Assembly: GCF_006345805.1 (NCBI RefSeq)
Contig: NC_043004.1
Coordinates: forward strand, 39,742,001 to 39,806,000
Reading direction: 5' to 3'
Length of the DNA: 64,000 nucleotides
Origin: Octopus sinensis
Taxonomy: Eukaryota
The position numbers and the translations under genes were made by a program. The notes below the pieces were generated by a model. The model was not told where the DNA came from and ran no database searches. It saw only the letters and a program-made list of their open reading frames with translations. Shown here one piece after another: positions 838 to 59,039 of the stretch (its first letter is position 1; every line of letters starts with the position of its first letter).

Positions 838-1061
838 ATTTCTGTGATAACGATCCCCATTGATAAATTTTTTTTTCTTTTCCCCTTTTTTTTCCTCTTC
901 CCCCTTTTTAAAAATTTTATTCCCCCCTTTTTTGTCCTCTTTCTTTCCCTTTACGATCCCTTTTGATCGAAAACCAAACCCCCTCTTTTTACCCCCAAAA
1001 GAAAAGCTCTACCTTGTAATCTGTCCTGTCTGTGTGCAGCCCTGTGTGGCTAATAAAGAAA
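838..1061 (+). mobile_element. 5'-truncated copy (3' UTR only) of the Tx1-clade LINE at 1909-8000
   Basis: Matches LINE 7765-8000 (tttctgtgataacgatcc...aaagaaaagctctaccttgtaat...gcagccctgtgtggctaataaagaaa); flanked on both sides by TATC/TACC repeats. Confidence 0.9.
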
Positions 1062-1443
1062 CATATCTACTTACTTACCTATCTATCTTCTTTTATATAT
1101 GTATATAGATAGATAGATAGATAGATATGTGAGTGTATGTGTATATATGTATACGTAAACATATACTTGTGTGTGTGTTTGTGCTTGACCTCCCTCTACC
1201 GCATGTCAAACTGGTTTATGTCCACCTGAAGTAGCAGTTCGACAAAAGACATCCGATAGAATGAGTACCAGACTTAAAACGAAAAAATAAATCAATAAAT
1301 AAAAATACATGGACTACTTGAGTCGGTTTATTCGACTAAAGACTTTAACAGAACTGCCCCAGCATGGCTGCAGTCCAATGAGTGAAACAAATAAAAGATA
1401 AAAGTTATACACAGAGACGCGTACATAAATACATTTACACAGT

Positions 1444-1512
<69 letters not shown>

Positions 1513-1547
1513 TTATCTATCTATCCATCTATCTATCTATCTACCTA

Positions 1548-1578
<31 letters not shown>

Positions 1579-1630
1579 GCCTGTCCATCTATCTGTCTGT
1601 CTGTCCATCTGTCTATCTATCTGACTGCCA

Positions 1631-1676
<46 letters not shown>

Positions 1677-2120
1677 TATCTATCTGTCTGTCTCTAACAC
1701 TATGTATCTCTCTATCTCACTTTCTATCTATCTGTCTGTCTATCTGTCTGTCTATCTACCTATCTATCTATCTATCTATCTAACTGTATGTCTGTCTCTA
1801 ACACTATGTATCTATCTATCTCACGTTATATCTATCTATCTATTTATGCATCTATCTCTAACACTCTAAATCTATCTCTTACTTTCTGTCTATCTCTATC
1901 TATCTATCACAATGGACGGACGCTAGTCATATCGGCTCCAAGTAAGTTGGCCACTTTTACATGTTTAAAACTCCTTGTTGTCAAATATTTTGTTTTAATC
2001 GTTGTGCAAATTCATTCACTAAAAAACCTGAGAATTATTCACGTAGAATTCCGCCCCTGTATGGGCGAAATTACAAAAAAACTTTCAAAACTTTCGTGGG
2101 TTTTTTAGCCATTTTTCATT

Positions 2121-4135
2121 TTGAAAATGGCAACTAGAAACCACGTGGCTAGCCCGCCAGTCATGCAGAACGGTAGCAAAACACTATTGCTACCACTAGC
2201 TGCTAAACATCGCAGCGTGAACACCGCTGTCACCACCATCACCACCACCAACAACAACAACAACAACAAATCTAACGTCGCATTCACCATCGCCGCGACC
2301 AAAGACATTAACTTAGATTTCCCCTCACTCCCCACACCACTTGTTGATGATAAAGGGACAGAGAAAGGGATTTCAAAAATGAATACAAACGAAAACATGA
2401 ATGCCAGCACCACCACCATCACCACCAACAACAACAACAACGAAATTGGCACAAAGCCGCCTACCAAAGACAACACCGCCAACACCAACACCACTACTAC
2501 GACGTCAAATGCTACATCCAAGCCTTCTGCTGCTAATACCGCCAACACCAACACCACTACCATGACTTCAATTAACACTGCCACAATTAACACTTCTACT
2601 GCCAAATTCAAAACGAATTTTGCGGACGTAACAAAACAAAAAAGAACAATTGTAACATTCACCACACAAGAGATAAACCGCACAAAGGCACTCTTCTCCA
2701 AAGAAGGAGACAAATTGCACCTTCATATTCCACAACACATCGTGGAAAACACGCAAAAAAAAAACAATAATTTATAAAGTAATAAACAAAAAAACAAGAA
2801 GAACAGAAAATGCACCGCAGGAAAAAATCGATAAATGCCTTCGTCCTGTATGGGACTCCAAGGAATATATCAGTTGGGGAAACAAATTTGGTACAGTCCA
2901 AGTACGTTTCCTCAACGAAAGTTTAGCAAAACGTTTTTCCACATTGGAGCTACATTCGGACGACTTGGTAATGATACCAGTCTATTTAAACAAAAGGGTC
3001 ACGAAAGTCCAAATAAAAAACATACCATTTGATGTCGAAACACAATGGGTGGTCTCTGCCATCTGCTTTGAAATGTCAGAGACAATGTCAGAGACAAACA
3101 TCCTGGAAATCGCGGTTCTAGGAGAGAAAGACTATGTGGGCAAATCAATCGAATTCCTGCTTCAATTGGATGAAGCAGCAAGAGAGAAGATACCCACCGC
3201 TATAGAACTGCCAGGAGGCTACAAACTCTATATAGTGGTAGAGGGCAGGCGACCACGCTGCTATTTGTGTGGAAGCGAAACACACTTGAAAAAGACGTGC
3301 CCAACCACTGCACACCAAGAGCAACAACAACAACCACTACCACAACCAAAGCACTCCGGAAAAAAAGCTCTACTACCCACACCACCATCAACACAGAAGA
3401 CGACAAGAGAAGCACACCAAGCTAATCCGTCATCAACCAAAAACCACTCGACACCTGGAAAAATACCAACACTACCATCAACAGCAAAACCCAAAGGAAC
3501 AGAAAAACAAAGAAAACACACACAAACTGATCCCCCATCCCTTATACCGCACTCACACACACAAACACTCAACAACCAACAACAACGAAAACAACAACAC
3601 AACCACTTACACAGACATACATAGAAGCCCACAACATACCCCTACCCCTTCTGATTCCTCAGAAATTTCGTCGGAAGACGACGAAACCAGTGAGGAATGG
3701 CAAATAGCTACAAAAAGAAGGAAAATAAAGAGCAGAAACACAACCAAACCAAATGCAAACACGAACAAAGCAGGGGGAAATACATCTCCCGAAGACATTT
3801 CAAAACCCAACGCAAACAACAGCCACACCAACACCACAAAAACATATACAGCAAACATGCTCACAGCCATAGACACCAAAAACACAAATTTGATGGAATA
3901 CATCCAATCAAAAACAAACATAACAGAAGATGACATAAAAACAAACAACCACCCATACACAACACCACCAGACCACATCAAAATAATACACATCTCCAAA
4001 AGTCTGCACCACACACTCAAAGGCATTTTCCCCAGTGCGGTTGGTAAATGCCAAAAATATCTCACAAAGAAACTGTACTGGGATCTTCTCGAGGACAAAA
4101 CAACGGAGGAGAAAGCAAAAACTTTCGAGCAGTAA
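2121..4135 (+). pseudogene. LINE ORF1 (gag-like RNA-binding protein), broken by two frameshifts near 2760 and 3590
   Basis: Pieces 2121-2777, about 2776-3624 and about 3590-4135 join; CX2CX4HX4C knuckle CYLCGSETHLKKTC preceded by VTKVQIKNIPF (RRM-like); frameshifts fall in A/CAA runs. Confidence 0.8.
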
Positions 4136-4166
4136 GTAACCCTCTGTATTCTAATTCATTAGAACT

Positions 4167-7100
4167 ATGATCAAGATTGGTTGTGTAAATGCGCGTGGCT
4201 TGGGGTCCCCTTGGAAACAAGGGTACCTCTTAAATGACATAAAGTCACATAAGTTAGAAATCATAGCCATAAGCGAGACCAGACTCCACAATCCGCGGGC
4301 CCTAAAGACCATGTTTGGCGGACAGTTCAACATTTATTTTTCCCCCTGTCTGCCGAGAATGGGCGGTAGTGGCACCGCGGTACTTTTTCACAAGAGTCTG
4401 GATCTCAATGTAAGGACAATATTCGTAGACCCGGAGGGTAGACTGGTCGTCCTGGATGTCGACGGCAGCAATGGGTGCGCTTTTCGGCTCGTATCAGTTT
4501 ACGCACCGCCCTTAACAGGTCGGGCGGATTTCTTTCAGCGTCTAGAAGTTTTCTTGGGAACGTCTCGTCCTTTACTCTTAGTGGGGGATTGGAATGCTAC
4601 CTTGGACACGCATGTAGACTACGTGGGTAGAGATAGGAATAGACGGGGATGCAAAAGCCTCAGAGACCTGCTCAGACGCTTTCAACTGTCTGACAGGTTT
4701 CGACTAGACCACCCGAATGCGCCAACGTGGACATGGAGCAACCGCATCGGGTCGTCGAGATCGTATCTAGATAGGATACTGTGTAGGACAGTAGATAGAG
4801 ATAGCATAGGATGTCCACAATTCCACATAGTCAGCTACACGGATCACAAACTTGTGACATGTACGCTAGACTTAGGTAAGACACTTAGGCAGGGTCCCGG
4901 ATACTGGAAACTAAACGCGTCTTTCCCATCGAGACAAGTTTTCAGAGACCGGATTAGCACACTAGTAAAGAGGGCTTTGACGGGAGCCATCATCAACAAC
5001 AAATGGTGGTTTGCCCTCAAGAGAGCAGTAAAAGCAGAAGCGATTAGGTACAGCAAAGCACTAGCCATAGATAGAAATAGAGTAGAGGGTGAGCTAGTTA
5101 AGAAGCTAGAAGAGGCAATTAGAAGCGGCATCGCATCCGACGTTTTGGCGGCGAGGTTGGCCCTCGACCAACACTTCAACGCCAAACACGAAGGATGTGC
5201 TGTCAGAGCTAGGATGCGTGCTCTAAGGAACGAAGGTGTTGGAGCCGCGAGAGAGGCCCGGGTGGCAGAGGCGCAACAGGGCAACAAAGCCACCATTCGG
5301 TCACTGGTAGATGAACAGGGGCGCGAATTGCTCGAGCCAAGTAAAATGTGTGAGGCCTTTCAGCAGCATTTTGCCCGACTGTTCGGAACGAGTGGAGGGC
5401 AAGAACGTAGGGTGGACTTCAGTGCCTACCTACATAGCCTACCACGACTCTCGACAAGAAAGGCAGGGTGCTGCGAAGGTGCCATCACGGCGGCGGAAGT
5501 GCGGGAAGCGATGGCAGAATGCTCGAGGGACAAATCACCGGGTTTGGATGGTCTACCCTACGAGCTTTACAATTGTATGCCAGACTTGTTTGGAGATCTC
5601 TGGCGGCGGTGTACTGCAACTGGCAGCAAAACGGGAGCATTCCTGGTTTTGTGAGCCGAGGAGCCGTAACACTGCTGAAGAAAGATCTAAACAAGGGAAA
5701 TGTAATAGATAACTTTAGGCCCATCACTCTGCTTAATGCAGACTTGAAAATTTTGGCCAAGGTGCTAGCCAAGAGGTTGGCGCTTGTCATCGAGAAACTG
5801 GTCGACAAGGCGCAAACATGCGCCGTGCCAGGCCGGACCATCCATGACAACCTCCATCTGATGCGCTACATCATAGACAGGGTAGTTAACGAACCTGGCA
5901 TGGGTGGGGCCCTGATCAACTTGGATCAATCAAAAGCCTTTGATAGGGTAGACCATCGATACTGGAGGCAGTCCTGAGAGCGGCTGGTTTCGGTCCCGTC
6001 TTCCGCGGCTGGATAGCTGCCTTGTACAGAGGCATCCGTTCGGTAATTCGCGTAAATGGACATCTATCGAGACCTTTCGACATTGCACGTTCGGTCCGTC
6101 AGGGATGCCCCCTCTCGGCGCTTCTATACGTATTGACTCTTGAGCCACTACTGCGGAAGCTGGCGACTCTAAGGGGCATCCCGCGAGAATTGGGATGCGG
6201 GACGAGCGTGTCTGCATACGCGGACGACGTCACCGTCATAGTGTCTAGCCACGAGCACATCGAGCTGGTCGGCGAGACACTGAAAAACTACGAAGCGGTG
6301 ACAGGAGCGAAAATCAACCGGGAAAAGTCAGTGGGCTTGCGACTAGGCACCTGGAGAAGCAAGCCCATGCCGTCCACCAGCGCCTCCGTCGTGGGACGCT
6401 GGACCGACGGCCCGGTTGAGTTGCTCGGGGTCTGGTTTGGTCCGGACCTCCAAGTGGAGAAGAACTGGAACGAGATAACGAGTAGGGTGGTCACTCTCGC
6501 CCGGCAATGGGCCGAGAGGAAACTGTCCCTAAAAGGTCGAGCGGAGGTGGCGAACACGTACATCGCGTCCGTCATCTACTACCGCCTGACCGTCGTACCT
6601 TGTCCGACCCTACCATCACCAAACTACAACGCATCCTCTTTCGCTTCTTGTGGAAAGGATGCGTCCCGATGGTCAGGCGATCCATTTGCTGTCAACACCC
6701 GTTAAAAGGAGGGCTGGGCATGCCGTGGTTGATGATGCGCAGACACGCGCTGAGACTGCGACATCTCTGGCTCTATGTAGACGACGGTGAACAGGTGTGG
6801 TCGCCGTTTGTGAGGCACGCTTTCCCGCAGCTCGTCTCCATGACCGAACTGCAGTCGTGGATCAAAAAGAGGCCGAGGAAGGGCGAATGGCACCGCGAGT
6901 GTCGCGTTGCTCTCAAGCAACTCTGCCGTCCTGGGTCGACCTTAAGTGACTTCAACACAACCAAAGCATTCTATAGGGGTTTAGTGGAGGGGAGGTACGA
7001 CGACGAGCTCGGGGCGAACCTGGACGTCGACGAGGAGTACCTGACCCGCCTGTTCGGGACGACTTTCAGGCCAGGGCCCATGGACAACTTCCAGAGATCC

Positions 7101-7601
7101 CTGGCCTGGCAGTGCTACCGAGAAGCGCTACCCGTTCGGGATAAGCTCTACAGACACGGCTCGAGAAACACGGGGCCGACCTGCCCGAGATGCGGTCAGA
7201 GCGACGAAACCGTTCTGCACGCACTCGTTCAGTGTCCAACAATTTCCGACCTGTGGGCTTATGTCGAACAACTGCTGTCACGTGTGGGACGAGTCGGTTT
7301 ATCAGCTGAGTCTATCGTCAATATTGTCACGCCTCCTTCCTTCAAACGGGAAGGAAGAGCTATTTTCATCATCCTTGTGGCTATGGCGAAAGAATGTATC
7401 TGGTGGACGCGTCTGAAAGGATTGGAGACAAACACTTTCCTCTCTGGTCAATCTCTCATCAACTTCTTCAAGTACCACTTGAAAAGGAAAGTGAGAGTAG
7501 AGAGGCAAGTTTTGTCTAGCGAATGTTTTAAAAAAAGATGGGTGAATGTAGCAAGAATGGCACGTATGAATGACGAAGCCACCTTGAGCATAGTCCTATG
7601 A
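4167..7601 (+). pseudogene. LINE ORF2: APE endonuclease, reverse transcriptase and C-terminal CCHC zinc finger; three single-base frameshifts (about 5600, 5965, 6605)
   Basis: APE motifs NARGL, SETR, GDWN, SYTDHKLV; RT motifs KSPGLDGLP, FRPITLLNADLKILAK, LDQSKAFDRV, QGCPLS, YADD; CPRCGQSDETVLHALVQC. Confidence 0.93.
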
Positions 7602-7892
7602 ACCCAGAAATCGAAAACAGAGAGTTGCTTATTTGCAAAAAAAAAGAAAAAAAAAAAGAAATATAAAATGTGACTTCATTGACCGAGGTTACCGTGGTCT
7701 TTTCCGCAGGCTTTTCTTTCACGGGTAAACCTCACCTGTCCTCCCCTTTACACTTCATATTGACATTTCTGTGATAACGATCCCTATTGATCATTTTTTC
7801 GTCTCCCCCCCCCTTTTTTTTTTTTTTTAACCCCCCTTATTTTTGTCCTCTTTCTCTCCTTTTACGATCCCTTTTGATCGAACCTCCCCCTT

Positions 7893-7930
<38 letters not shown>

Positions 7931-8499
7931 CCTTCAAAAGAAAAGCTCTACCTTGTAATTTGTTCTATCTGTGTGCAGCCCTGTGTGGCTAATAAAGAAA
8001 CATATCTTACTAGTAATCTAGCTATCTACCTATTTTATTTTCGCTTATTTTCGCTTACTTTATATTCTTGTCAATGTGTCATGCATTATGCATTAGTTTG
8101 TGATTTTCTTTTAACGCGCAAATAGGAAATGCCAACATTTGAAACCAATATGAACAGCTGAAGTAACAGCAGCAGTAGTATTAGTAGTAGTAGTTGTTGT
8201 TGTTGTAGTTGTAGTAGTAGTTGATGTTTTTCAAATATGCATGTGTTTACAAATAAAGGTGAAGAAGAAATTGAGTGAAGATTTGATGATAGACATGCAA
8301 CTGACTCGCTGCTTTCAAAAAACACAGCTGAGACACGAATGTGTGTGTGTGTTTGTGTGCGTGGGTGTGTGTATGTGCGCACGGGCGCTTGTGTGTGAAT
8401 ATATGAGCATATGTGAGTGCTTATATGTATGCATATAAATATATAGATAGATAGATAGGTAGGTAGGTAGGTAGGTAGGTAGGTAGGTAGATAGATAAG

Positions 8500-8712
8500 T
8501 TTCTTTATTGGCCACACAGGGCTGCACACAGATGGGACAAGTTATAAGGTAGAGCTTTTCTTTTGGGGGAGAAAAAAAAAGGTGGCGTAGGTTTTCGATC
8601 AAAAGGATCGTAAAAGGGGAAAAAGAACAAAAAAAAAAGAAAAAAAGGAAAAGAAAAAAGGGAAAAGGAACAAAAGAAAAGAAAAATGAAAAAAGAAGAA
8701 AAAAGGGGAAGA
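8500..8712 (-). mobile_element. Second 5'-truncated 3' UTR copy of the Tx1 LINE, inverted
   Basis: Reverse complement reads tttacgatccttttgatcgaa...aaagaaaagctctaccttataac...gcagccctgtgtggccaataaagaaa; flanked by TATC/TACC repeats on both sides. Confidence 0.88.
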
Positions 8713-9052
8713 GATAGATAGATAGATAGGTAGGTAGGTAGGTAGTTAGGTAGGTAGGTAGATGTGTGTATGTGTGTGTGTGCGTGTGTTTGTGAAATCC
8801 AAAATTAGGGACTATAGTAAATGAAATCCAGGCTCTATGTTTCATAGCAGAACCGCAGAAATAGTAATTAATCCAAACAAGGGGTAATCCGTTTGTTACA
8901 CACCGAGTCAAAGATACCTTAATCTAAAGAATCTCCTGCTAGCCTACATGGGATCCCCCGACGAAAATCTTTTGATGCGCCATTAGAAGCAGCAGCATCT
9001 TGAGGTGTTCCTTGAGAAGTCTAACAATTATTCTCTCTCTCCTCCTCTCTTT

Positions 9053-11849: not shown

Positions 11850-12060
11850 ATCCTTTCTACTATAGGCACAAGGCCTGAAATTTGGCAAAGAGAGAGAGCT
11901 AGTCGATTACATCGACACCCAATGTTTCACTGGTACTTAATTTATCGACCCCGAAAGGATGAAAAGCAAAGTCGACCTCGGGAGAATTTGAACTCAGAAC
12001 GTAAAGACGGACGAGATATCGCTAAGTATTTTGCCCGAGGCGCTAACGATTCTGCCAGCT
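11850..12060 (-). mobile_element. SINE family A (tRNA-like head, conserved gtcgactttgcctttcatcctttcggggtcgat core), tail type A2
   Basis: Reverse complement of the family consensus; A2 tail aaatttcaggccttgtgcctatagtagaaagg. Confidence 0.85.
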
Positions 12061-14257: not shown

Positions 14258-14460
14258 GGCGGCGAGCTGTCAGAAACTTTAGCACGCTTAGCGGTATTTC
14301 GTCTGTCTTTACGTTCTGAGTTCGAATTCCGCCGTGGTCGACTTTGCCTTTCATCCTTACGTGGTCTATAAATTAAGTACCAGTTGCGTACTGGGTCGAT
14401 CTAATCGACTGGTTCCCTCCCCTGAAAATTTCAGGCCTTGTGCCAAGAGTAGAAAACAAT
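14258..14460 (+). mobile_element. SINE family A, tail A2, 16-bp TSD
   Basis: ggcggcgagctg head, B box gttcgaattcc; TSD atatatggaatatgta at 14241-14256 and 14459-14474. Confidence 0.88.
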
Positions 14461-14480
14461 ATATGGAATATGTACATATA

Positions 14481-23340: not shown

Positions 23341-24237
23341 ATATTCCGCCGAGGTCGACTTTGCCTTTCATCCTTTCGGGCTCGATTAAATAAGTTCCAG
23401 TTATGCACTGGGGTCGATGTAATCGACTTAATATCTATGTCTCTCCTTGTTTGTCCCCTCTATGTTTAGCCCCTTGTAGGTAATAAAGAAATCGAAATAG
23501 GTATTTCGTCTGCGGTTACGTTCTGAATTCAAATTCCGCCGAGGTTGACTTTGCCTTTCATCCTTTCGGGGTCGATTAAACAAGTACCAGTTACGCACTG
23601 AGGTCGATATAATCGACTTAATCCGTTTTTCTGTCCTTGTTTGTCCCCTCTGTGTTTAGCCCCTTGTGGGTAATAAAGAAATAGGTATTTCGTCTGTCTT
23701 TACGTTCTGAGTTCAAATTCCGCCGAGGTTGACTTTGCCTTTCATCCTTTCGGGGTCGATAAATTAAGTACCAGTTACGCACTGGTGTCGATGTAATCGA
23801 CTTAATACCTATGTCTGTCCTTGTTTGTCCCTTCTGTGTTTAGCCCTTTGAGGGTAGTAAAAAAATAGAAATAGGTATTTCGTCTGCAGTTACGTTCTGA
23901 ATTCAAATTCCGCCGAGGTTGACTTTGCTTTTCATCCTTTCGGGGTCGATTAAACAAGTATCAGTTACGCACTGAGGTAGATATAATCGACTTAATCCGT
24001 TTTTCTGTCCTTGTTTGTCCTCACTGTGTTTAGCCCCTTGTGGGCAGTAAAGAAATAGGTATTTCGTCTGCGGCTACGTTCTGAGTTCAAATTCCGCCGA
24101 GGTCGACTTTGCCTTTCATCTTTTCGGGGTTGATTAAATAAGTACCAGTTGTACCCTGGAGTAGATGTAATCGACTTAATCCCTTTGTCCTTGTTAGTCT
24201 CCTCTATGTTTGGCACCCTGTAGGCAATAAAGAAAGA
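23341..24237 (+). repeat. Head-to-tail array of five family A SINE bodies (about 185 bp unit, tail A1)
   Basis: Repeated gttcaaattccgccgagg...gtttagccccttgtgggtaataaagaaata units joined at ggtatttcgtctg. Confidence 0.9.
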
Positions 24238-24397
24238 AATATTTTACATATATTTACAATTCAAAATGTCCAGACTTTGCTTTCACCATTGCCCTTAATT
24301 TTTTCTCAACTGTTTCATCACCTCATAATGCTTTATACCAGCCATTTTTAATGCCACAATGTATTCACGTTTTGTTTGAGCTGCCATCTTTAATTAA

Positions 24398-32281: not shown

Positions 32282-32610
32282 AATTACTTTTTACTACCAT
32301 ATTAAATCGTTTCAGCTTATCTGTTTAAGGTTTAAATTTAAATTTGGTTTGAAAAGGTCAAAGTCATGCTTATAGCGAATAGAGGGTCACGTGGATTACT
32401 GGAAGAAGAAAACTCTTAAACATATGAATAATGAGATCGCGTAGAAACTCCCACATTGTTTCGTTAACGGGTATTTATCGATGCTGAATATCACTAAAGC
32501 AATCCAATGAGATCATCTATATGCTAGAAGTAACAAACCTCTTTAATCGAACTCTACTGGCTCAAATAATGAATACTTTGGACAATGCAGTTCATGTTAT
32601 ATATAACAGT

Positions 32611-32842
32611 AGGCGGCGAGCTAGCAGAATCGTTAGCACGTCGGGCGAAATGCTTAGCGGTATTTCGGTTGCCGTTACGTTGTGAGTTCAAATTCCGCCG
32701 AGGTCGACTTTGCCTTTCATCCTTTCGGGGTCGATAAATTAAGTACCAGTTAAGCACTGGGGTCGATATAATCGACTTAATACCTATGTCTGTCCATGTT
32801 TGTCTCCTCTATGTTTAGCCCCTTGTGGGTAATAAAGAAATA
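32611..32842 (+). mobile_element. SINE family A, complete monomer with tail A1
   Basis: ggcggcgagctagcagaatcgttagc head through gggtaataaagaaata. Confidence 0.88.
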
Positions 32843-33070
32843 GTTATATATAATAGTAGGATATTCATGGCTTGACCTGGGACAAAATAACATCATCTCT
32901 AGGGCTGCATTTTTCTTTTGTTTTTGTTTTTTAATATTTTGTTTTTCGCTATCGCTTATTCAGTTAAGAAAGACCACTACCCGTATCCATTCTGTAGCCT
33001 CCATTGTTGGTAAGAGGAATTGAGGAATATGTTCTGAGACCAAGAACATAGTTTGAATACTTGCAATACA

Positions 33071-36218: not shown

Positions 36219-36650
36219 TGGCGAGCTGGCAGAATCGTTAGCACGCCGAGTAAAATGCTTAGTAGCATTTCTTCGTCTTTACGGTTTGAGTTCAAATTCT
36301 GCTGAGGTCGACTTTGCCATTCATCCTTTCGGCGTCGATAAATTAAGTACCAGTTACGTACTGAGGCTGATCTAATCGACTGGCCCTCTCCTCAAAAATT
36401 TTCGGGCCTTGTGCCTAGAGTAGAAAAGAATTTTTCTCTTACTTTATAAGGCAGATACGTTAACACGCCGGGCAAAATGCTTAGCGACATTTCTTCGTCT
36501 TGACGGTTCTGAGTTCAAATTCCGCCGAGGTCGACTTTGCCTTTCATCCTTTGGGTGTTGATAAAATAAGCATCATTTGAACACTGGAGTAGATCTAATC
36601 GACTTACCCCCTCCCCCGGTATTGCTGGTCTTGTGCCAAAATTTAAAACC
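36219..36650 (+). mobile_element. Two adjacent family A SINEs (tail A2) followed by a (TTA)(TCA)(TTA) tract
   Basis: Copies at about 36219-36428 and 36455-36650. Confidence 0.85.
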
Positions 36651-36671
36651 TTCTTTATTATTATTATTATT

Positions 36672-41500: not shown

Positions 41501-41943
41501 TATATACAAACGTGAAAAAGCAGTTGCTCTTTCAGAATTTTCTCTATGACAAAATATTACACGTAGTACTGTTCCACGTTAATGTATACATTATAAATTT
41601 TATAATCACAGGTATTTTAATACGATACTGTTCCAAGAGTGGATACTACTAACTGCGCGCACACGCACACATACAAACACACACACACACACACATACAC
41701 GAGGTGTGAATGAAATGTCGGAGCGTCGAACAAAAATATCTTGCGGTATAGTGCTCCACTGTTGATACATCCCTTTACATTAAGGGTAACGGGGACTGTC
41801 CGCCGTTATGCAGTTGATAAGATAAGTAGAAAACAAATATACAATCTAGTAGTAGCATTTAAGTTGCTCTTCGGTAAATGAAACCGCTAAAGAATTATTA
41901 GCAATTTCAATGTTTCCCTGATTTAATACTTATTATACTGAAA

Positions 41944-42595
41944 GGCGGCGTGCTGGTAGAAGCGTTAGCGCGCCAGGCGAAATGCTTAGCGGTGTTTCGT
42001 CTGCCGTCACGTTCTGAGTTCGAATTCCGCTGAGGTCAACTTTGCCTTTCACCCTTTCGGGGTCGATAAATTAAGTACCAGTTACGCACTGGGGTCGATG
42101 TAATCGATTTGATCTCTTTGTCTCCTCTATGTTTAGCCCCTTGTGGGCAATCAAGAAATAAGAAACGTAAGCACGCCGGGCGTGCTTTTCGGTATTTCGT
42201 CTCTCTTTGCGTTCTGAATTCAAATTCCACCGAGATCGACTTTGCCTTTCATCTTTTCGGAGTCGATAAATTAAGTACCAGTTGCATACTGGGGTCGATC
42301 TAATCGACTGCTCCCCACCTCCCAAAAAATTTCGGGCTTTGTGCCTCGAGTAGAAAAGAATATTTATTATACTGAAAGGCGATGAGCTGGCAGAAACGTT
42401 AGCGCACCGGGCGAAATGCTTAGCCGTATTTCGTTTGTCTTTACGTTCTTAGTTCAAATTCCACCGAGGTCGACTTTGTCTTTCATCATTTCGGAGTCGA
42501 TAAATTAAATACCAGTTGTGTATTGGGGTCGACCTAATCGACTGGCCCTCTCCCACAAAATTTCCAGCCTTGTGCCTAGAATAGCAAAGAGTATT
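41944..42595 (+). mobile_element. Cluster of three family A SINEs (A1, A2, A2)
   Basis: Three consecutive heads, cores and tails; ttattatacygaa present three times as flanks. Confidence 0.87.
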
Positions 42596-43066
42596 TATTA
42601 TACCGAACCTGAAGTTGACCTCGGCAGGATGTGAACTCTAGATTTAAGGCGACCATCACAAATCATCTTGTCTGTCACCCCAGAGTTTCTGCTAATCCAC
42701 CGTGCTTAACATTTTTTTATAATAAGACCAAGATATCTGCCGTCATTGTTCTGTACTCTATGGAATAAGGTACCAATCAAATTCTCGGGAGCAGAGCATA
42801 TAAAGAACGATAACTCTGTACCTTGGTTCCAAATAATTATTTGATAACAAAATCGTAACTTTGTACCTTGGTAACAGAATCGAAACGTAATTTTGTACCT
42901 TGGTTAAAAATAATTATTTGATAACAGAATCGTAAATGCTGTGAGGAAAATACCTTGGAGTATTTGTTCTGCTCTTTTACATTTAAATCTCACCGCTTGG
43001 GTTTTATCCTCGTAGAGCAGAGAAAAGAAAAGTACCAGTCAAATACTCAAATCGATTTAATTGATT

Positions 43067-45061: not shown

Positions 45062-45450
45062 AAGCTAGCAGAATCGTTAGCACGCCGGGCGAAATGCTTA
45101 GCAGTATTTCGTCCGCCGCTACGTTCTGAGTTCAAATTCCGCCGAAGTCGACTTTGCCTTTCATCCTTTCGGGGTCGATTAAATAAGTACCAGTTACGCA
45201 CTGGGGTCGATGTAATCGACTTAATCCGTTTGTCTATTCTTGTTTGTCCCCTCTGTGTTTAGCCCCTTGTGGGTAGTAAAGAAATAGGTATTTCGTCTGC
45301 CGCTACTTTCTGAGTTCAGATTCCGCCGAGGTCGACTTTTCCTTTCATCCTTTCGGGGTCGATAAATTAAGTACCAGTTACACACTGGGGTCGTTATAAT
45401 CGACTTACCCCTCTCCCAAAATTTCAGGCCTTGTGCTTATAGTATAAAGC
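45062..45450 (+). mobile_element. Family A SINE dimer (A1 body joined at ggtatttcg to an A2 body)
   Basis: Single head, two cores, junction aaagaaata|ggtatttcgtctg. Confidence 0.88.
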
Positions 45451-46409: not shown

Positions 46410-47200
46410 TTCATTTGTCTTTACGTTCTGAGTTCAAATTCCACCGAAGTCGACTTTGCCTTTTATCCTTTCGTGGTCGATAAAATAAGTACCATTTGAA
46501 CATAGGGGTCAATGTAATCAACTTGCCTCCACCCTCGAAATTGCTAGCCTTATGCTAAAATTTGAATTCATTATTTTTAATGGGTGACAGTGATAAGAAC
46601 GGGGATGTGGTAAGATCGTTTAGAACATCGGGCAAAATGTTTTGTGTTGTTCGTTCCAGCATTTTTACGTTCTGAGTTCAAATCCAGCTGAGATCAATTT
46701 TATTTCTTATCTTTACGAGGTCGATAAACAAAAGTACTGGGCTTGATATATTTGGCTTCCTTCAAGGTTTCAGGCCTTGTTACAAATCACTTTTAAAGGT
46801 GGTGGATGACAAAATCGGCAGAGTATCAATATTTACTTTCAGTCCTTTATGTTCCGACCTCGAATCCCACCAGAATTGATTTTGTCTTGAATTCTTCCCA
46901 AGTAGGAACTAATCAAGTTCTTGGATCGATTTAATACCCTACATAACCCCCACCGCCTTTTTAGGCCCTTTGTCTATGCCAGAAACCATGGTTTATTAAT
47001 TAACAGCATTATTATTAATCAACATGGCAGTGGAACGGAATGACAAAATGTCTTGCAGTAATTAGTTGCATCACTTGAAATTCTCAGTTCAAATTCCGCC
47101 GAGTGGGTTTGTCTGAGATCCATTCTGGGTTCGATACAATAATTACTAATCAATTAACGATGATAAAGTTAATCCCAACAAATCTGTAGCCTTTTTCTTA
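46410..47200 (+). mobile_element. Series of about four increasingly decayed family A SINEs
   Basis: Recurrent gttctgagttcaaat(t)cc and gtcgata motifs. Confidence 0.6.
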
Positions 47201-58622: not shown

Positions 58623-59039
58623 GGCCGCGAAATGTTTTTCTCACGTGAGTTCCGGACCCCAGTTATGAACTCATTTGCATACAGCCAATCAGAGCTCAAC
58701 CATCAGACTGATTTATGAATGCATAACAAGTGATGGGCGTAGCCGTATTTCGTCTACCGTTCCGTTCAAATTCCGCCGAGGTCGACTTTGCCTTTCATCT
58801 TTTCGGGGTCGATGAATTAAGTACCAGTTACGCACTGGGGTCGATGTAATCGACTCAGTCCGTCTGTCTGTCCTTGTTTGTCTCCTCTGTGTTTAGCCCC
58901 TTGTGGGTAGTAAAGAAATAGGTAGAGTGTGTCTGTCAACTTGACAACAAGGTCAAGGTGACCTCTGATTGGCTGTATGCAAATGATTTCATTACTAGGG
59001 TCCGGAACTCTCGTGGGAAAGAAAATTCGCATCCTGGCC
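58623..59039. mobile_element. Inverted-repeat element (arms of about 75 bp) with a family A1 SINE (58740-58921) inside
   Basis: gagttccggaccc...tcatttgcatacagccaatcagag at 58647-58694 and its reverse complement at 58963-59010. Confidence 0.65.

What the first reader, a model, noticed from the sequence alone, without database searches (positions are those of the whole stretch)
23642..23681. SINE A1 tail is the 3' end of the Tx1 LINE: candidate SINE-LINE partnership
Seen: SINE tgtcccctctgtgtttagccccttgtgggtaataaagaaa (23642-23681) versus LINE tgtcctgtctgtgtgcagccctgtgtggctaataaagaaa (1022-1061; also 7961-8000). They match at 33/40 positions without gaps, both at the extreme 3' end and both without poly(A). 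A small hairpin is kept despite the changes (AGCC/GGCT in the LINE, GCCC/GGGT in the SINE). Established: many SINEs borrow the 3' tail of a partner LINE for RT recognition, mostly L2, CR1 and RTE. Inference: this SINE is mobilised by a stringent-type Tx1 element, which is atypical for the L1 group. Sister copies (A2) carry a wholly different tail, implying partner switching.
Basis: partly seen in the sequence, partly recalled or inferred. Interest (0 to 1): 0.75.

Follow-up and report, generated by a model that had tools for sequence, protein, structure and literature searches.

The report
Octopus SINE borrows LINE tail
A short octopus retroposon (SINE) ends in the same roughly 50-base, hairpin-containing sequence as a family of L1/Tx1-like LINE elements, so those LINEs very probably copy it; this is a new example of a well-known kind of parasitism, and it names a likely driver for the very abundant octopus SINEs.

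Summary
23642-23681 matches the LINE ends at 1022-1061 (33/40), 7961-8000 (32/40) and 8539-8500 on the minus strand (33/40). The best chance match in 200 simulated windows is 26/40.

The LINE (about 1908-8008) has an endonuclease, a reverse transcriptase and a zf-RVT domain, and its only matches among solved structures are L1 ORF2p. Its ORF2 has three frameshifts. All three copies lie in (CTAT)n/(CTAC)n microsatellites.

The tail box is conserved at the 3' end of seven related LINE copies from Octopus sinensis, Argonauta hians and two metagenome samples. The O. sinensis LINE (41/45) is closer to the SINE than the window's LINE. Two unrelated Argonauta SINE families carry the same box.

A 4-bp stem with a CUUGU loop covaries across 10 lineages: 97.5% of cells are paired and 3 of 4 pairs change on both sides.

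The "wholly different" A2 tail keeps this hairpin. It matches the 3' end of a second lineage of the same LINE group, which includes a cuttlefish element.

Verdict: a genuine shared-tail SINE/LINE pair, and a new member of a known kind. Three points are corrected:
- the window's LINE subfamily is probably not the actual partner;
- tail switching took place within one LINE group;
- Tx1 clade membership was not tested by phylogeny.

Trans-mobilisation is inferred, not shown.

The parts
23642..23681 (+). SINE A1 tail as named in the finding. Hairpin: 5' stem 23659-23662 (GCCC), loop 23663-23667 (CTTGT), 3' stem 23668-23671 (GGGT), followed by AATAAAGAAA.
23343..24244 (+). Tandem array of five head-truncated A1 SINE units (period 184-190). 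Every junction reads ...GAAATAG|GTATTTCG.
32612..32843 (+). Full-length A1 SINE (232 nt). It has a head with box A/B-like motifs, a central body and a LINE-derived tail of about 50 nt. It is flanked by 15-nt target-site duplications at 32597-32611 and 32844-32858.
41944..42166 (+). A1 SINE copy. It is fused at its 3' end to a 5'-truncated A2 SINE (42167-42363), and the pair is flanked as one unit by TTATTATACTGAAA.
45063..45287 (+). A1 SINE copy, slightly 5'-truncated, joined at GAAATAG|GTATTTCG to a unit with an A2 tail (45288-45440). The composite sits in (ATT)n.
58745..58921 (+). A1 SINE copy with a 38/40 tail.
1908..8008 (+). Full-length L1/Tx1-like LINE. ORF1-like region 2121-3624. ORF2 4167-7601 holds the endonuclease, the reverse transcriptase and zf-RVT, and is broken by three frameshifts near 5620, 5960 and 6612. 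The 3' UTR is 7602-8000. The 5' junction follows (TCTA)n at 1444-1905.
7961..8000 (+). 3' tail box of the full-length LINE (32/40 to the SINE), followed by CATATCT... of a degenerate (CTAT)n.
838..1068 (+). 5'-truncated LINE copy (3' UTR only) with the tail box at 1022-1061. Stem 1038-1041/1048-1051 (AGCC/GGCT), loop 1042-1047. It has (TATC/CTAC)n on both sides.
8493..8720 (-). Third, 5'-truncated LINE copy with the tail box at 8539-8500 (33/40). It is embedded in (CTAC/CTAT)n on both sides.
14410..14465 (+). Example of an A2 SINE tail (...AAAATTTCAGGCCTTGTGCC...). Other A2 tails begin near 11901(-), 17751(-), 36381, 42309, 42543, 43933, 45405 and 55381.
36604..36660 (+). Example of a third tail type, A3 (...TGCTGGTCTTGTGCCAAAATTTAAAACC...(ATT)n), with the same hairpin core. 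Another A3 tail is at 46523.

Best explanation
The A1 element is a short retroposon of about 232 nt with three parts: a head with Pol III box A/B-like motifs, a central body, and a 3' module of about 50 nt copied from the 3' UTR end of an octopod L1/Tx1-like LINE group.

The module has a pyrimidine-rich stretch, a 4-bp G/C stem closed by a CUUGU loop, and AAUAAAGAAAU. The LINE's ORF2 protein (endonuclease plus reverse transcriptase) most likely binds this stem-loop at the RNA 3' end. That is 'stringent' recognition. The protein then nicks the target DNA and starts reverse transcription right at the end of the tail. This would explain why both LINE and SINE copies lack poly(A) and why the SINE has 15-nt target-site duplications.

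The SINE uses the same signal in trans. Its real partner is probably a subfamily like the one seen in O. sinensis (L003), not the (CTAT)n-specific, frameshifted subfamily in this window. The older A2 and A3 SINE subfamilies carry variant tails with the same hairpin, taken from sister lineages of the same LINE group.

Shown: homology, terminal position, absence of poly(A), target-site duplication, conservation across species, and stem covariation. Inferred: binding by ORF2p and trans-mobilisation.
For: - The tail similarity is far above chance and sits at the 3' terminus of all three LINE copies.
- Local alignment of the A1 consensus tail to whole LINE bodies, both strands, always lands on the LINE's last bases. 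Scores are 45 for the window LINE, 60 for L003 of O. sinensis (41/45) and 54 for L007 of Argonauta. The best of 200 shuffles is 30-35.
- The box lies downstream of the zf-RVT end of ORF2 in seven other LINE copies: L003, L006, L007, L008 and two in L014 are clear matches, and the tail in L011/L012 is a weaker, probable one.
- Two unrelated Argonauta SINE families end in the same box, which occurs about 27 times in 20.8 kb. This points to repeated recruitment of the same tail.
- Stem covariation across 10 lineage sequences: 97.5% of cells paired, 3 of 4 pairs changed on both sides, score 0.639 against 0.176 for shuffles (0/500). Slid controls score 0.13 or less.
- MFE folds recover the hairpin in nearly all tails.
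- The A2 consensus aligns at 28/32 to the 3' end of the L005 LINE (score 42 against a shuffle maximum of 29). The core GGCCTTGTGCC also lies at the 3' end of a cuttlefish LINE.
- Pairwise JC distances are similar for A1 copies (0.09-0.15) and for the last 80 nt of the LINE copies (0.11-0.17).
- The LINE is L1-like: endonuclease, reverse transcriptase and zf-RVT, and its only solved-structure matches are L1 ORF2p.
Against: - There is no experimental evidence of trans-mobilisation.
- The window's LINE copies all sit in (CTAT)n/(CTAC)n, whereas the five independent A1 loci do not. If target choice were fully encoded by the LINE protein, the SINE should share it.
- The window's LINE has a broken ORF2.
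- Individual hairpins are weak. Folding z-scores range from -0.15 to -1.9 for the A1-type tails.
- The covariation rests on about 10 lineages, and the structure was derived from the same sequences.
- ARAGORN and Rfam do not recognise the SINE head as a tRNA.
- The link between A2 and L005 rests on a short core of about 32 nt, and the host species of L005 is unknown.
Confidence: 0.7

Rival explanations
1. One reading: the (CTAT)n-specific LINE subfamily present in this window is itself the element that mobilises A1.
For: It has a shared tail at 32-33/40 in the same window. The age of its last 80 nt is similar to that of A1 copies. In Argonauta, the SINE tails end ...GAAATCTAT, like the (CTAT)n LINE subfamily there.
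Against: The L003-type tail is clearly closer, at 41/45 against about 39/47. The window LINE ends AAAGAAAC and has a 6-nt loop, while A1 and all other LINE tails have AAAGAAAT and CUUGU. A1 copies are not in (CTAT)n.
Confidence: 0.15
2. The shared tail is a historical relic. A1 once took the LINE tail, but it is now copied by another LINE (RTE, CR1 or Dong-R4, all active in octopus), or the box serves another role such as a poly(A) signal or RNA stability.
For: AATAAA lies within the box, so part of its conservation in LINEs may reflect polyadenylation. Other active LINE clades exist in octopus (PMC13282606).
Against: SINE tails keep the hairpin with compensatory changes, yet they lose AATAAA: it is AATAGAG in Argonauta and AGTAAA in 4 of 9 A1 copies. 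Copies end precisely at the box without poly(A). Three SINE families carry the same box.
Confidence: 0.1
3. The transfer went the other way: the LINEs acquired the box from a SINE, for example by template switching. The LINE is then not the source of the tail.
For: Template-switch composites of SINE units are visible in the window (23343-24244, 41944-42363, 45063-45440).
Against: The box is at the same place in LINE lineages only 30-60% identical in protein, in octopods and (core only) in a cuttlefish. No SINE body sequence lies upstream of it. Even if true, the functional conclusion (shared recognition signal) would stand.
Confidence: 0.04
4. Chance similarity of two short, pyrimidine-rich and A-rich stretches.
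For: Only 40 nt were compared, and both sequences contain AATAAAGAAA.
Against: The maximum is 26/40 in 200 simulated windows against 32-33/40 observed. No shuffle out of 200 reaches the observed local alignment scores. The same box is found in independent loci of three species.
Confidence: 0.01

Closest known systems
Eel UnaSINE1 / UnaL2 and other 'stringent-type' SINE/LINE pairs with a common 3' tail (Okada, Ohshima, Kajikawa; reviewed in PMC3747384)
   Same: The SINE's last ~50 nt are homologous to the LINE's 3' UTR end. There is a small conserved stem-loop close to the end, no poly(A), and a short repeat or A-rich stretch after the stem-loop.
   Different: Those pairs belong mostly to the L2, CR1 and RTE clades and some were proven in retrotransposition assays. 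Here the LINE is L1-like (endonuclease, reverse transcriptase, zf-RVT), some subfamilies are microsatellite-specific, and nothing has been tested experimentally.
Maize ZmSINE2/ZmSINE3 with a stringent L1-clade LINE lineage (Ohshima 2012, PMC3472496)
   Same: An L1-superfamily LINE with a conserved, structured 3' end that SINEs share. This shows that stringent recognition exists within the L1 group.
   Different: That case is a plant L1 lineage and the elements end in poly(A)-like tails. Here the lineage is an animal L1/Tx1-like one with no poly(A).
Crocodilian SINEU mobilised by Tx1-Mar (Kojima 2015, PMC4494074)
   Same: A non-autonomous short retroposon attributed to a Tx1-clade LINE.
   Different: That link rests on shared target preference and shared snRNA-derived 5' heads, and both elements have poly(A) tails. 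Here the link is a shared 3' tail, and target preference is not shared.
Kibi and Koshi, Tx1-clade LINEs specific for (TC)n and (TTC)n microsatellites (Kojima & Fujiwara 2004, as cited in PMC4494074)
   Same: An L1/Tx1-type LINE inserted in one orientation into a particular microsatellite. Here that is (CTAT)n in Octopus and Argonauta, and other subfamilies are followed by (ATT)n or (CA)n.
   Different: The microsatellite motif is different. No SINE partner was reported for Kibi or Koshi.
CORE-SINEs, including octopus OR1/OR2 (Ohshima & Okada 1994; cited in PMC4824008 and PMC4758252)
   Same: A tRNA-type head plus a conserved central body plus exchangeable LINE-derived tails. Octopus SINEs are annotated tRNA-Core in PMC8967140.
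   Different: I matched the body to the CORE domain from memory only. No LINE partner of the octopus CORE-SINEs is stated in the papers I could search.

Membership tests
SINE/LINE pair with a common 3' tail (stringent type) | The 3'-terminal region of the SINE is homologous to the 3'-terminal region of a LINE in the same genome. | tested here: met
   32-33/40 to three LINE copies in the window against a chance maximum of 26/40. Local alignments always land on the LINE's last bases.
SINE/LINE pair with a common 3' tail (stringent type) | Neither element ends in poly(A), and copies end precisely at the shared box. | tested here: met
   The LINE runs AAAGAAAC into the microsatellite. The SINE runs AAAGAAATAG into the target-site duplication.
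SINE/LINE pair with a common 3' tail (stringent type) | The tail is conserved among related LINEs more than the rest of the 3' UTR, with a conserved RNA structure. | tested here: met
   The box is present in seven other LINE copies from Octopus, Argonauta and two metagenome samples. Stem covariation: 97.5% paired, 3 of 4 pairs changed on both sides. The last 80 nt are 85-90% identical, against 67-83% for the whole 3' UTR.
SINE/LINE pair with a common 3' tail (stringent type) | The SINE is a retroposon: target-site duplications, and an internal Pol III promoter in a head derived from a small RNA. | tested here: inconclusive
   A 15-nt target-site duplication was found for 32612-32843. Box A-like (TGGCAGAATCG) and box B-like (GAGTTCAAATTCC) motifs are visible. 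ARAGORN and Rfam do not call a tRNA.
SINE/LINE pair with a common 3' tail (stringent type) | The LINE protein mobilises the SINE in trans through the tail. | not testable with these tools
   This needs a retrotransposition assay.
L1 superfamily, Tx1 clade | ORF2 has an N-terminal APE-type endonuclease, a reverse transcriptase and a C-terminal zinc-binding region, and is closest to L1 ORF2p. | tested here: met
   Pfam Exo_endo_phos, RVT_1 and zf-RVT. The only PDB matches are L1 ORF2p and L1 endonuclease. The relative L005 scores 7e-74 to L1 ORF2p against 1e-23 to R2.
L1 superfamily, Tx1 clade | The reverse transcriptase groups with Tx1 reference elements in a phylogeny. | not tested
   No Tx1 or L1 reference sequences could be obtained. 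The three protein searches returned no informative names. L1-Tx1 is the only L1-type class among the LINE classes listed as recently active in O. vulgaris (PMC13282606). That is indirect support only.
L1 superfamily, Tx1 clade | Target-sequence-specific insertion. | tested here: met
   All three window copies are in (CTAT)n/(CTAC)n in the same relative orientation, with the repeat on both sides. Two Argonauta copies of the same subfamily are followed by (CTAT)n.
CORE-SINE superfamily (octopus OR1/OR2) | A central CORE domain homologous to the MIR/OR consensus. | not tested
   The resemblance is recalled from memory. No reference sequence was available. Octopus SINEs are reported as tRNA-Core in PMC8967140.

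The most novel reading that the evidence does not exclude
One small RNA signal, a 4-bp G/C stem with a CUUGU loop at the 3' end of a cephalopod-wide L1/Tx1-like LINE group, may be the stringent recognition element of these LINEs. All CORE-SINE subfamilies in this window (tails A1, A2 and A3) carry it. If so, this one LINE group would account for much of the SINE expansion that fills more than 10% of octopus genomes. The LINE's microsatellite targeting would be uncoupled from RNA recognition, because the SINEs do not inherit it.
Probability: 0.4. Interest if true: 0.6.

Novelty: new member of a known kind. Interest (0 to 1): 0.45.

Why it matters
SINEs make up about 11-12% of the O. vulgaris genome and were still listed mostly as 'unclassified' in a 2026 annotation (PMC13282606). 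I found no paper that names their LINE partner.

A shared, covarying 3' stem-loop points to an L1/Tx1-like LINE group as the driver. It also gives a concrete element for mutagenesis in retrotransposition assays. It would add an animal L1-superfamily lineage to the few known L1-type elements with stringent 3' recognition. The mismatch between LINE and SINE target sites could help to separate RNA recognition from target choice.

Tried and rejected
- A scan of metagenome contigs for the tail pattern gave two chance hits in unrelated coding sequence.
- A scan of bacterial and archaeal genome contigs for contaminating octopus DNA gave nothing.
- The three protein searches gave many relatives but no informative names, so Tx1 against L1 could not be decided from annotation. 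Kojima 2015 has no supplement held as text from which reference sequences could be taken.
- ARAGORN and Rfam did not recognise the SINE head as a tRNA.
- BLAST of the L005 tail against the window is weak on its own (best E 0.06). Only the gapped alignment with shuffles made the A2-L005 link significant.
- Copy-level variation of the hairpin in decayed Argonauta SINE copies was looked at and set aside. Copies decay neutrally after insertion, so only lineage consensus sequences were used for covariation.
- The window LINE's stem needs a 1-nt register shift because its loop is 6 nt, so it was left out of the formal pair count.
- L004 and L013 are too short to reach the LINE tail. P0006 is not on record.
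- I considered whether the LINE 'tails' at 838-1068 and 8493-8720 are SINE fragments. This was rejected: they align to the full-length LINE's 3' UTR over 220-280 nt.

Full report
**1. The observation**

Ungapped identity of 23642-23681 is 33/40 with 1022-1061 and 32/40 with 7961-8000. A third LINE end, on the minus strand at 8539-8500, scores 33/40.

I scanned both strands of the window with the 40-mer. Nothing reaches 28/40 except nine SINE tails (32-40/40) and these three LINE tails. The best hit in 200 first-order Markov simulated windows is 26/40. BLAST gives E about 5e-6 for each LINE tail. The similarity is real.

**2. The SINE**

BLAST with one unit finds about 28 related pieces in the window. 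The complete element is 32612-32843 (232 nt). It starts GGCGGCGAGCTAGCAGAATCG..., which contains motifs like Pol III boxes A and B. It ends ...GGGTAATAAAGAAATAG. A 15-nt target-site duplication, TTATATATAA[C/T]AGTA, flanks it. There is no poly(A).

ARAGORN and Rfam do not call the head a tRNA. Its tRNA origin therefore rests on the box-like motifs and on the literature about octopus SINEs (PMC8967140, PMC4824008).

The copy named in the finding lies in a tandem array of five head-truncated units (23343-24244). Classifying the 22 body-containing units by tail gives this:

| Tail type | Units | Notes |
|---|---|---|
| A1 | 9 (5 loci) | the type in the finding |
| A2 | 10 | ...AAAATTTCAGGCCTTGTGCCTATAGTAGAAAGGAAT |
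| A3 | 2 | two more degenerate copies by eye...GCTGGCCTTGTGCCAAAATTTGAAACC(ATT)n |
| unclassified | 1 | |

Pairwise JC distances are 0.09-0.15 among A1 copies and 0.12-0.26 among A2 copies, so A1 is the younger subfamily.

**3. The LINE**

The element at about 1908-8008 encodes an APE-type endonuclease, a reverse transcriptase and a zf-RVT domain. Its only matches among solved structures are human L1 ORF2p and the L1 endonuclease. An intact relative (L005) matches L1 ORF2p at 7e-74 over the endonuclease and reverse transcriptase, against 1e-23 for R2. ORF2 in the window is broken by three frameshifts, near 5620, 5960 and 6612.

Two further copies, 838-1068(+) and 8493-8720(-), align to its 3' UTR over 220-280 nt. 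They are 5'-truncated LINEs, not SINE fragments.

All three copies are embedded in (CTAT)n/(CTAC)n microsatellites in the same relative orientation, with the repeat on both sides. The subfamily is therefore target-specific, like the microsatellite-specific Tx1-clade elements Kibi and Koshi (cited in PMC4494074). Two Argonauta hians copies of the same subfamily are also followed by (CTAT)n.

I could not obtain Tx1 or L1 reference sequences. The Tx1 assignment is therefore consistent with the evidence but untested. L1-Tx1 is the only L1-type class among the LINE classes listed as recently active in O. vulgaris (PMC13282606).

**4. Relatives**

Protein searches show that the window comes from an octopod. 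Hits include Octopus sinensis, O. bimaculoides and Argonauta hians. DNA around the homologues shows the same box just downstream of the ORF2 end in every LINE whose end could be read:

| Locus | Source | Tail |
|---|---|---|
| L003 | O. sinensis | ...TTGTCCCCCTCTATGTTTGGGCCCTTGTGGCTAATAAAGAAAT |
| L007 | A. hians | ...GTCCCCTCTATGTTTTTGCCCTTGTGGCTAATAAAAGAAATA(ATT)n |
| L008 | JGI metagenome sample | ...GGGCCCTTGTGGCCAATAAAAGAAATC(ATT)n |
| L006 | ENA metagenome sample | degenerate form, followed by (CA)n |
| L014 | A. hians, two copies | box followed by (CTAT)n |

Local alignment of the A1 consensus tail to whole LINE bodies, on both strands, always lands on the last bases of the LINE:

| LINE | Score | Best of 200 shuffles |
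|---|---|---|
| Window LINE | 45 | 35 |
| L007 | 54 | 30 |
| L003 (41/45 identical) | 60 | 30 |

The similarity thus increases at consensus level. The window's own LINE is not the closest tail.

In 20.8 kb of Argonauta DNA the box occurs about 27 times. It sits at the ends of at least two unrelated SINE families, a long one with a similar body and a short one of about 150 nt. Repeated recruitment of one tail argues that it is functional.

**5. The hairpin**

All tails place a 4-bp stem around a CUUGU loop:

| Lineage | 5' stem / 3' stem |
|---|---|
| L008 | GGCC/GGCC |
| L003 and the Argonauta SINEs | GGCC/GGCU |
| SINE A1 | GCCC/GGGU |
| SINE A2 | AGGC/GCCU |
| SINE A3 | UGGC/GCCA |
| L005 | (A)AGGC/GCCU(U) |
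| Cuttlefish L010 | UGGC/GCCG |
| Window LINE (6-nt loop) | AGCC/GGCU |

On an ungapped alignment of 10 lineage sequences, 97.5% of cells are paired and 3 of 4 pairs show changes on both sides. The covariation score is 0.639, against 0.176 for shuffles (0/500) and 0.13 or less for slid controls.

Three caveats apply. There are few lineages, the structure was derived from the same sequences, and single-sequence folding z-scores are weak.

AATAAA is kept in all clear LINE tails but not in the Argonauta SINE tails (AATAGAG). In octopus A1 copies it is kept only partly: 4 of 9 have AGTAAA. This suggests that in the LINE the box also serves as a poly(A) signal, while the SINEs preserve only the hairpin and the purine run. 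This is an inference.

**6. The A2 tail**

The A2 tail is not 'wholly different'. Its consensus aligns at 28/32 to the 3' end of a second LINE lineage (L005/L009, ENA sample ERZ21867824, host unknown). That lineage has an intact ORF1 with zf-CCHC and a 1158-aa ORF2, and is 37-50% identical to the window LINE. The alignment scores 42, against a maximum of 29 in 300 shuffles.

A cuttlefish (Acanthosepion pharaonis) LINE of that lineage has the same core, GGCCTTGTGCC, near its 3' end. It also has a second hairpin whose sequence differs but whose pairing is kept. L005 and L009 likewise differ by a compensatory change in that second hairpin.

Tail switching therefore happened among sister lineages of one LINE group.

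**7. Mechanism and its weak points**

The best reading is stringent 3' recognition. ORF2p binds the stem-loop, nicks the target and primes reverse transcription at the end of the tail, and the SINE uses this in trans.

Points in favour are the terminal position, the lack of poly(A), the target-site duplication, the conservation, the covariation, and the similar ages of A1 copies and LINE tails.

Points against:
- A1 copies are not in (CTAT)n.
- The window LINE is defective.
- Nothing has been tested experimentally.

The L003 LINE is not followed by a microsatellite, so its 3' flank gives no sign of microsatellite targeting, and it has the closest tail. A subfamily of that type is the more likely partner.

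**8. Comparison with what is known**

Shared-tail SINE/LINE pairs are classic, but they are dominated by CR1, L2 and RTE (PMC3747384). Within the L1 group, a stringent lineage with SINE partners is known in maize (PMC3472496). Tx1-Mar is proposed to mobilise SINEU in crocodilians, on the basis of shared targets and 5' heads, with poly(A) tails (PMC4494074).

In the searchable library I found no paper that links octopus SINEs to an L1/Tx1-like LINE by a common tail. Repbase and Dfam could not be consulted.

I therefore rate this a new member of a known kind. It is of moderate interest, mainly because octopus SINEs are so abundant and their partner LINE is not named in the papers I could search.

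Noticed in passing
window 23343-24244 and 45287|45288: SINE units are joined tail to internal position about 55 (...GAAATAG|GTATTTCG). Five units lie in tandem at 23343-24244, and TRF's period of 374 fits best, which suggests amplification two units at a time. The same junction recurs at 45287|45288, where the downstream unit carries the A2 tail. This looks like reverse-transcriptase template switching between SINE RNAs, followed by amplification at the DNA level.
   Followed up: partly
window 41930-42607: The site TTATTATAC(T/C)GAA occurs three times. It brackets an [A1 + 5'-truncated A2] composite and then a full A2 SINE. The two A2 units are only 84% identical. This looks like two separate insertions into one AT-rich target that resembles the (ATT)n ends of the tails.
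   Followed up: partly
window 1444-1905: A long (TCTA)n microsatellite (about 104 units by TRF) lies directly at the 5' junction of the full-length LINE. Many other (AGAT)n/(TCTA)n arrays occur across the window and could be targets.
   Followed up: partly
window 4167-7601: The LINE's ORF2 is interrupted by three frameshifts (about 5620, 5960 and 6612) but has few other defects. An ORF1-like region (2121-3624) has no Pfam match.
   Followed up: partly
window 36604, 46523, 55971, 10708(-): A third SINE tail type (A3) reads ...GAAATTGCTGGCCTTGTGCCAAAATTTGAAACC(ATT)n. It has the same hairpin core and sits on more divergent SINE bodies.
   Followed up: partly
L005 1-22307 and L009 (ENA ERZ21867824): Intact LINEs (ORF1 643 aa with zf-CCHC, ORF2 1158 aa) lie in a head-to-tail array with a period of 6.43 kb and 97-98% identity. 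The host species is unknown. No octopus SINE is present in the flanking 8 kb.
   Followed up: partly
protein P0006: A protein labelled 'MAG: zinc-binding domain-containing protein [Herbaspirillum sp.]' is 63% identical to the C-terminus of the octopod LINE ORF2. It is most likely host (cephalopod) DNA binned into a bacterial MAG.
   Followed up: no
L011/L012 about 1600-1640 (Logan SRR11869390/84): Another LINE relative (51% aa identity) has GGGTCGGCCCGAGGCTATCGTAGAAGATAGAT downstream of its ORF2. This is a possible fourth tail type, with a 3-nt loop, whose 3' half resembles the A2 tail (CTATAGTAGAAAGG). The end of the element could not be defined.
   Followed up: no
L007 1-20822 (Argonauta hians): The tail box occurs about 27 times in 20.8 kb, at the ends of at least two different SINE families. 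SINE density there is very high.
   Followed up: partly
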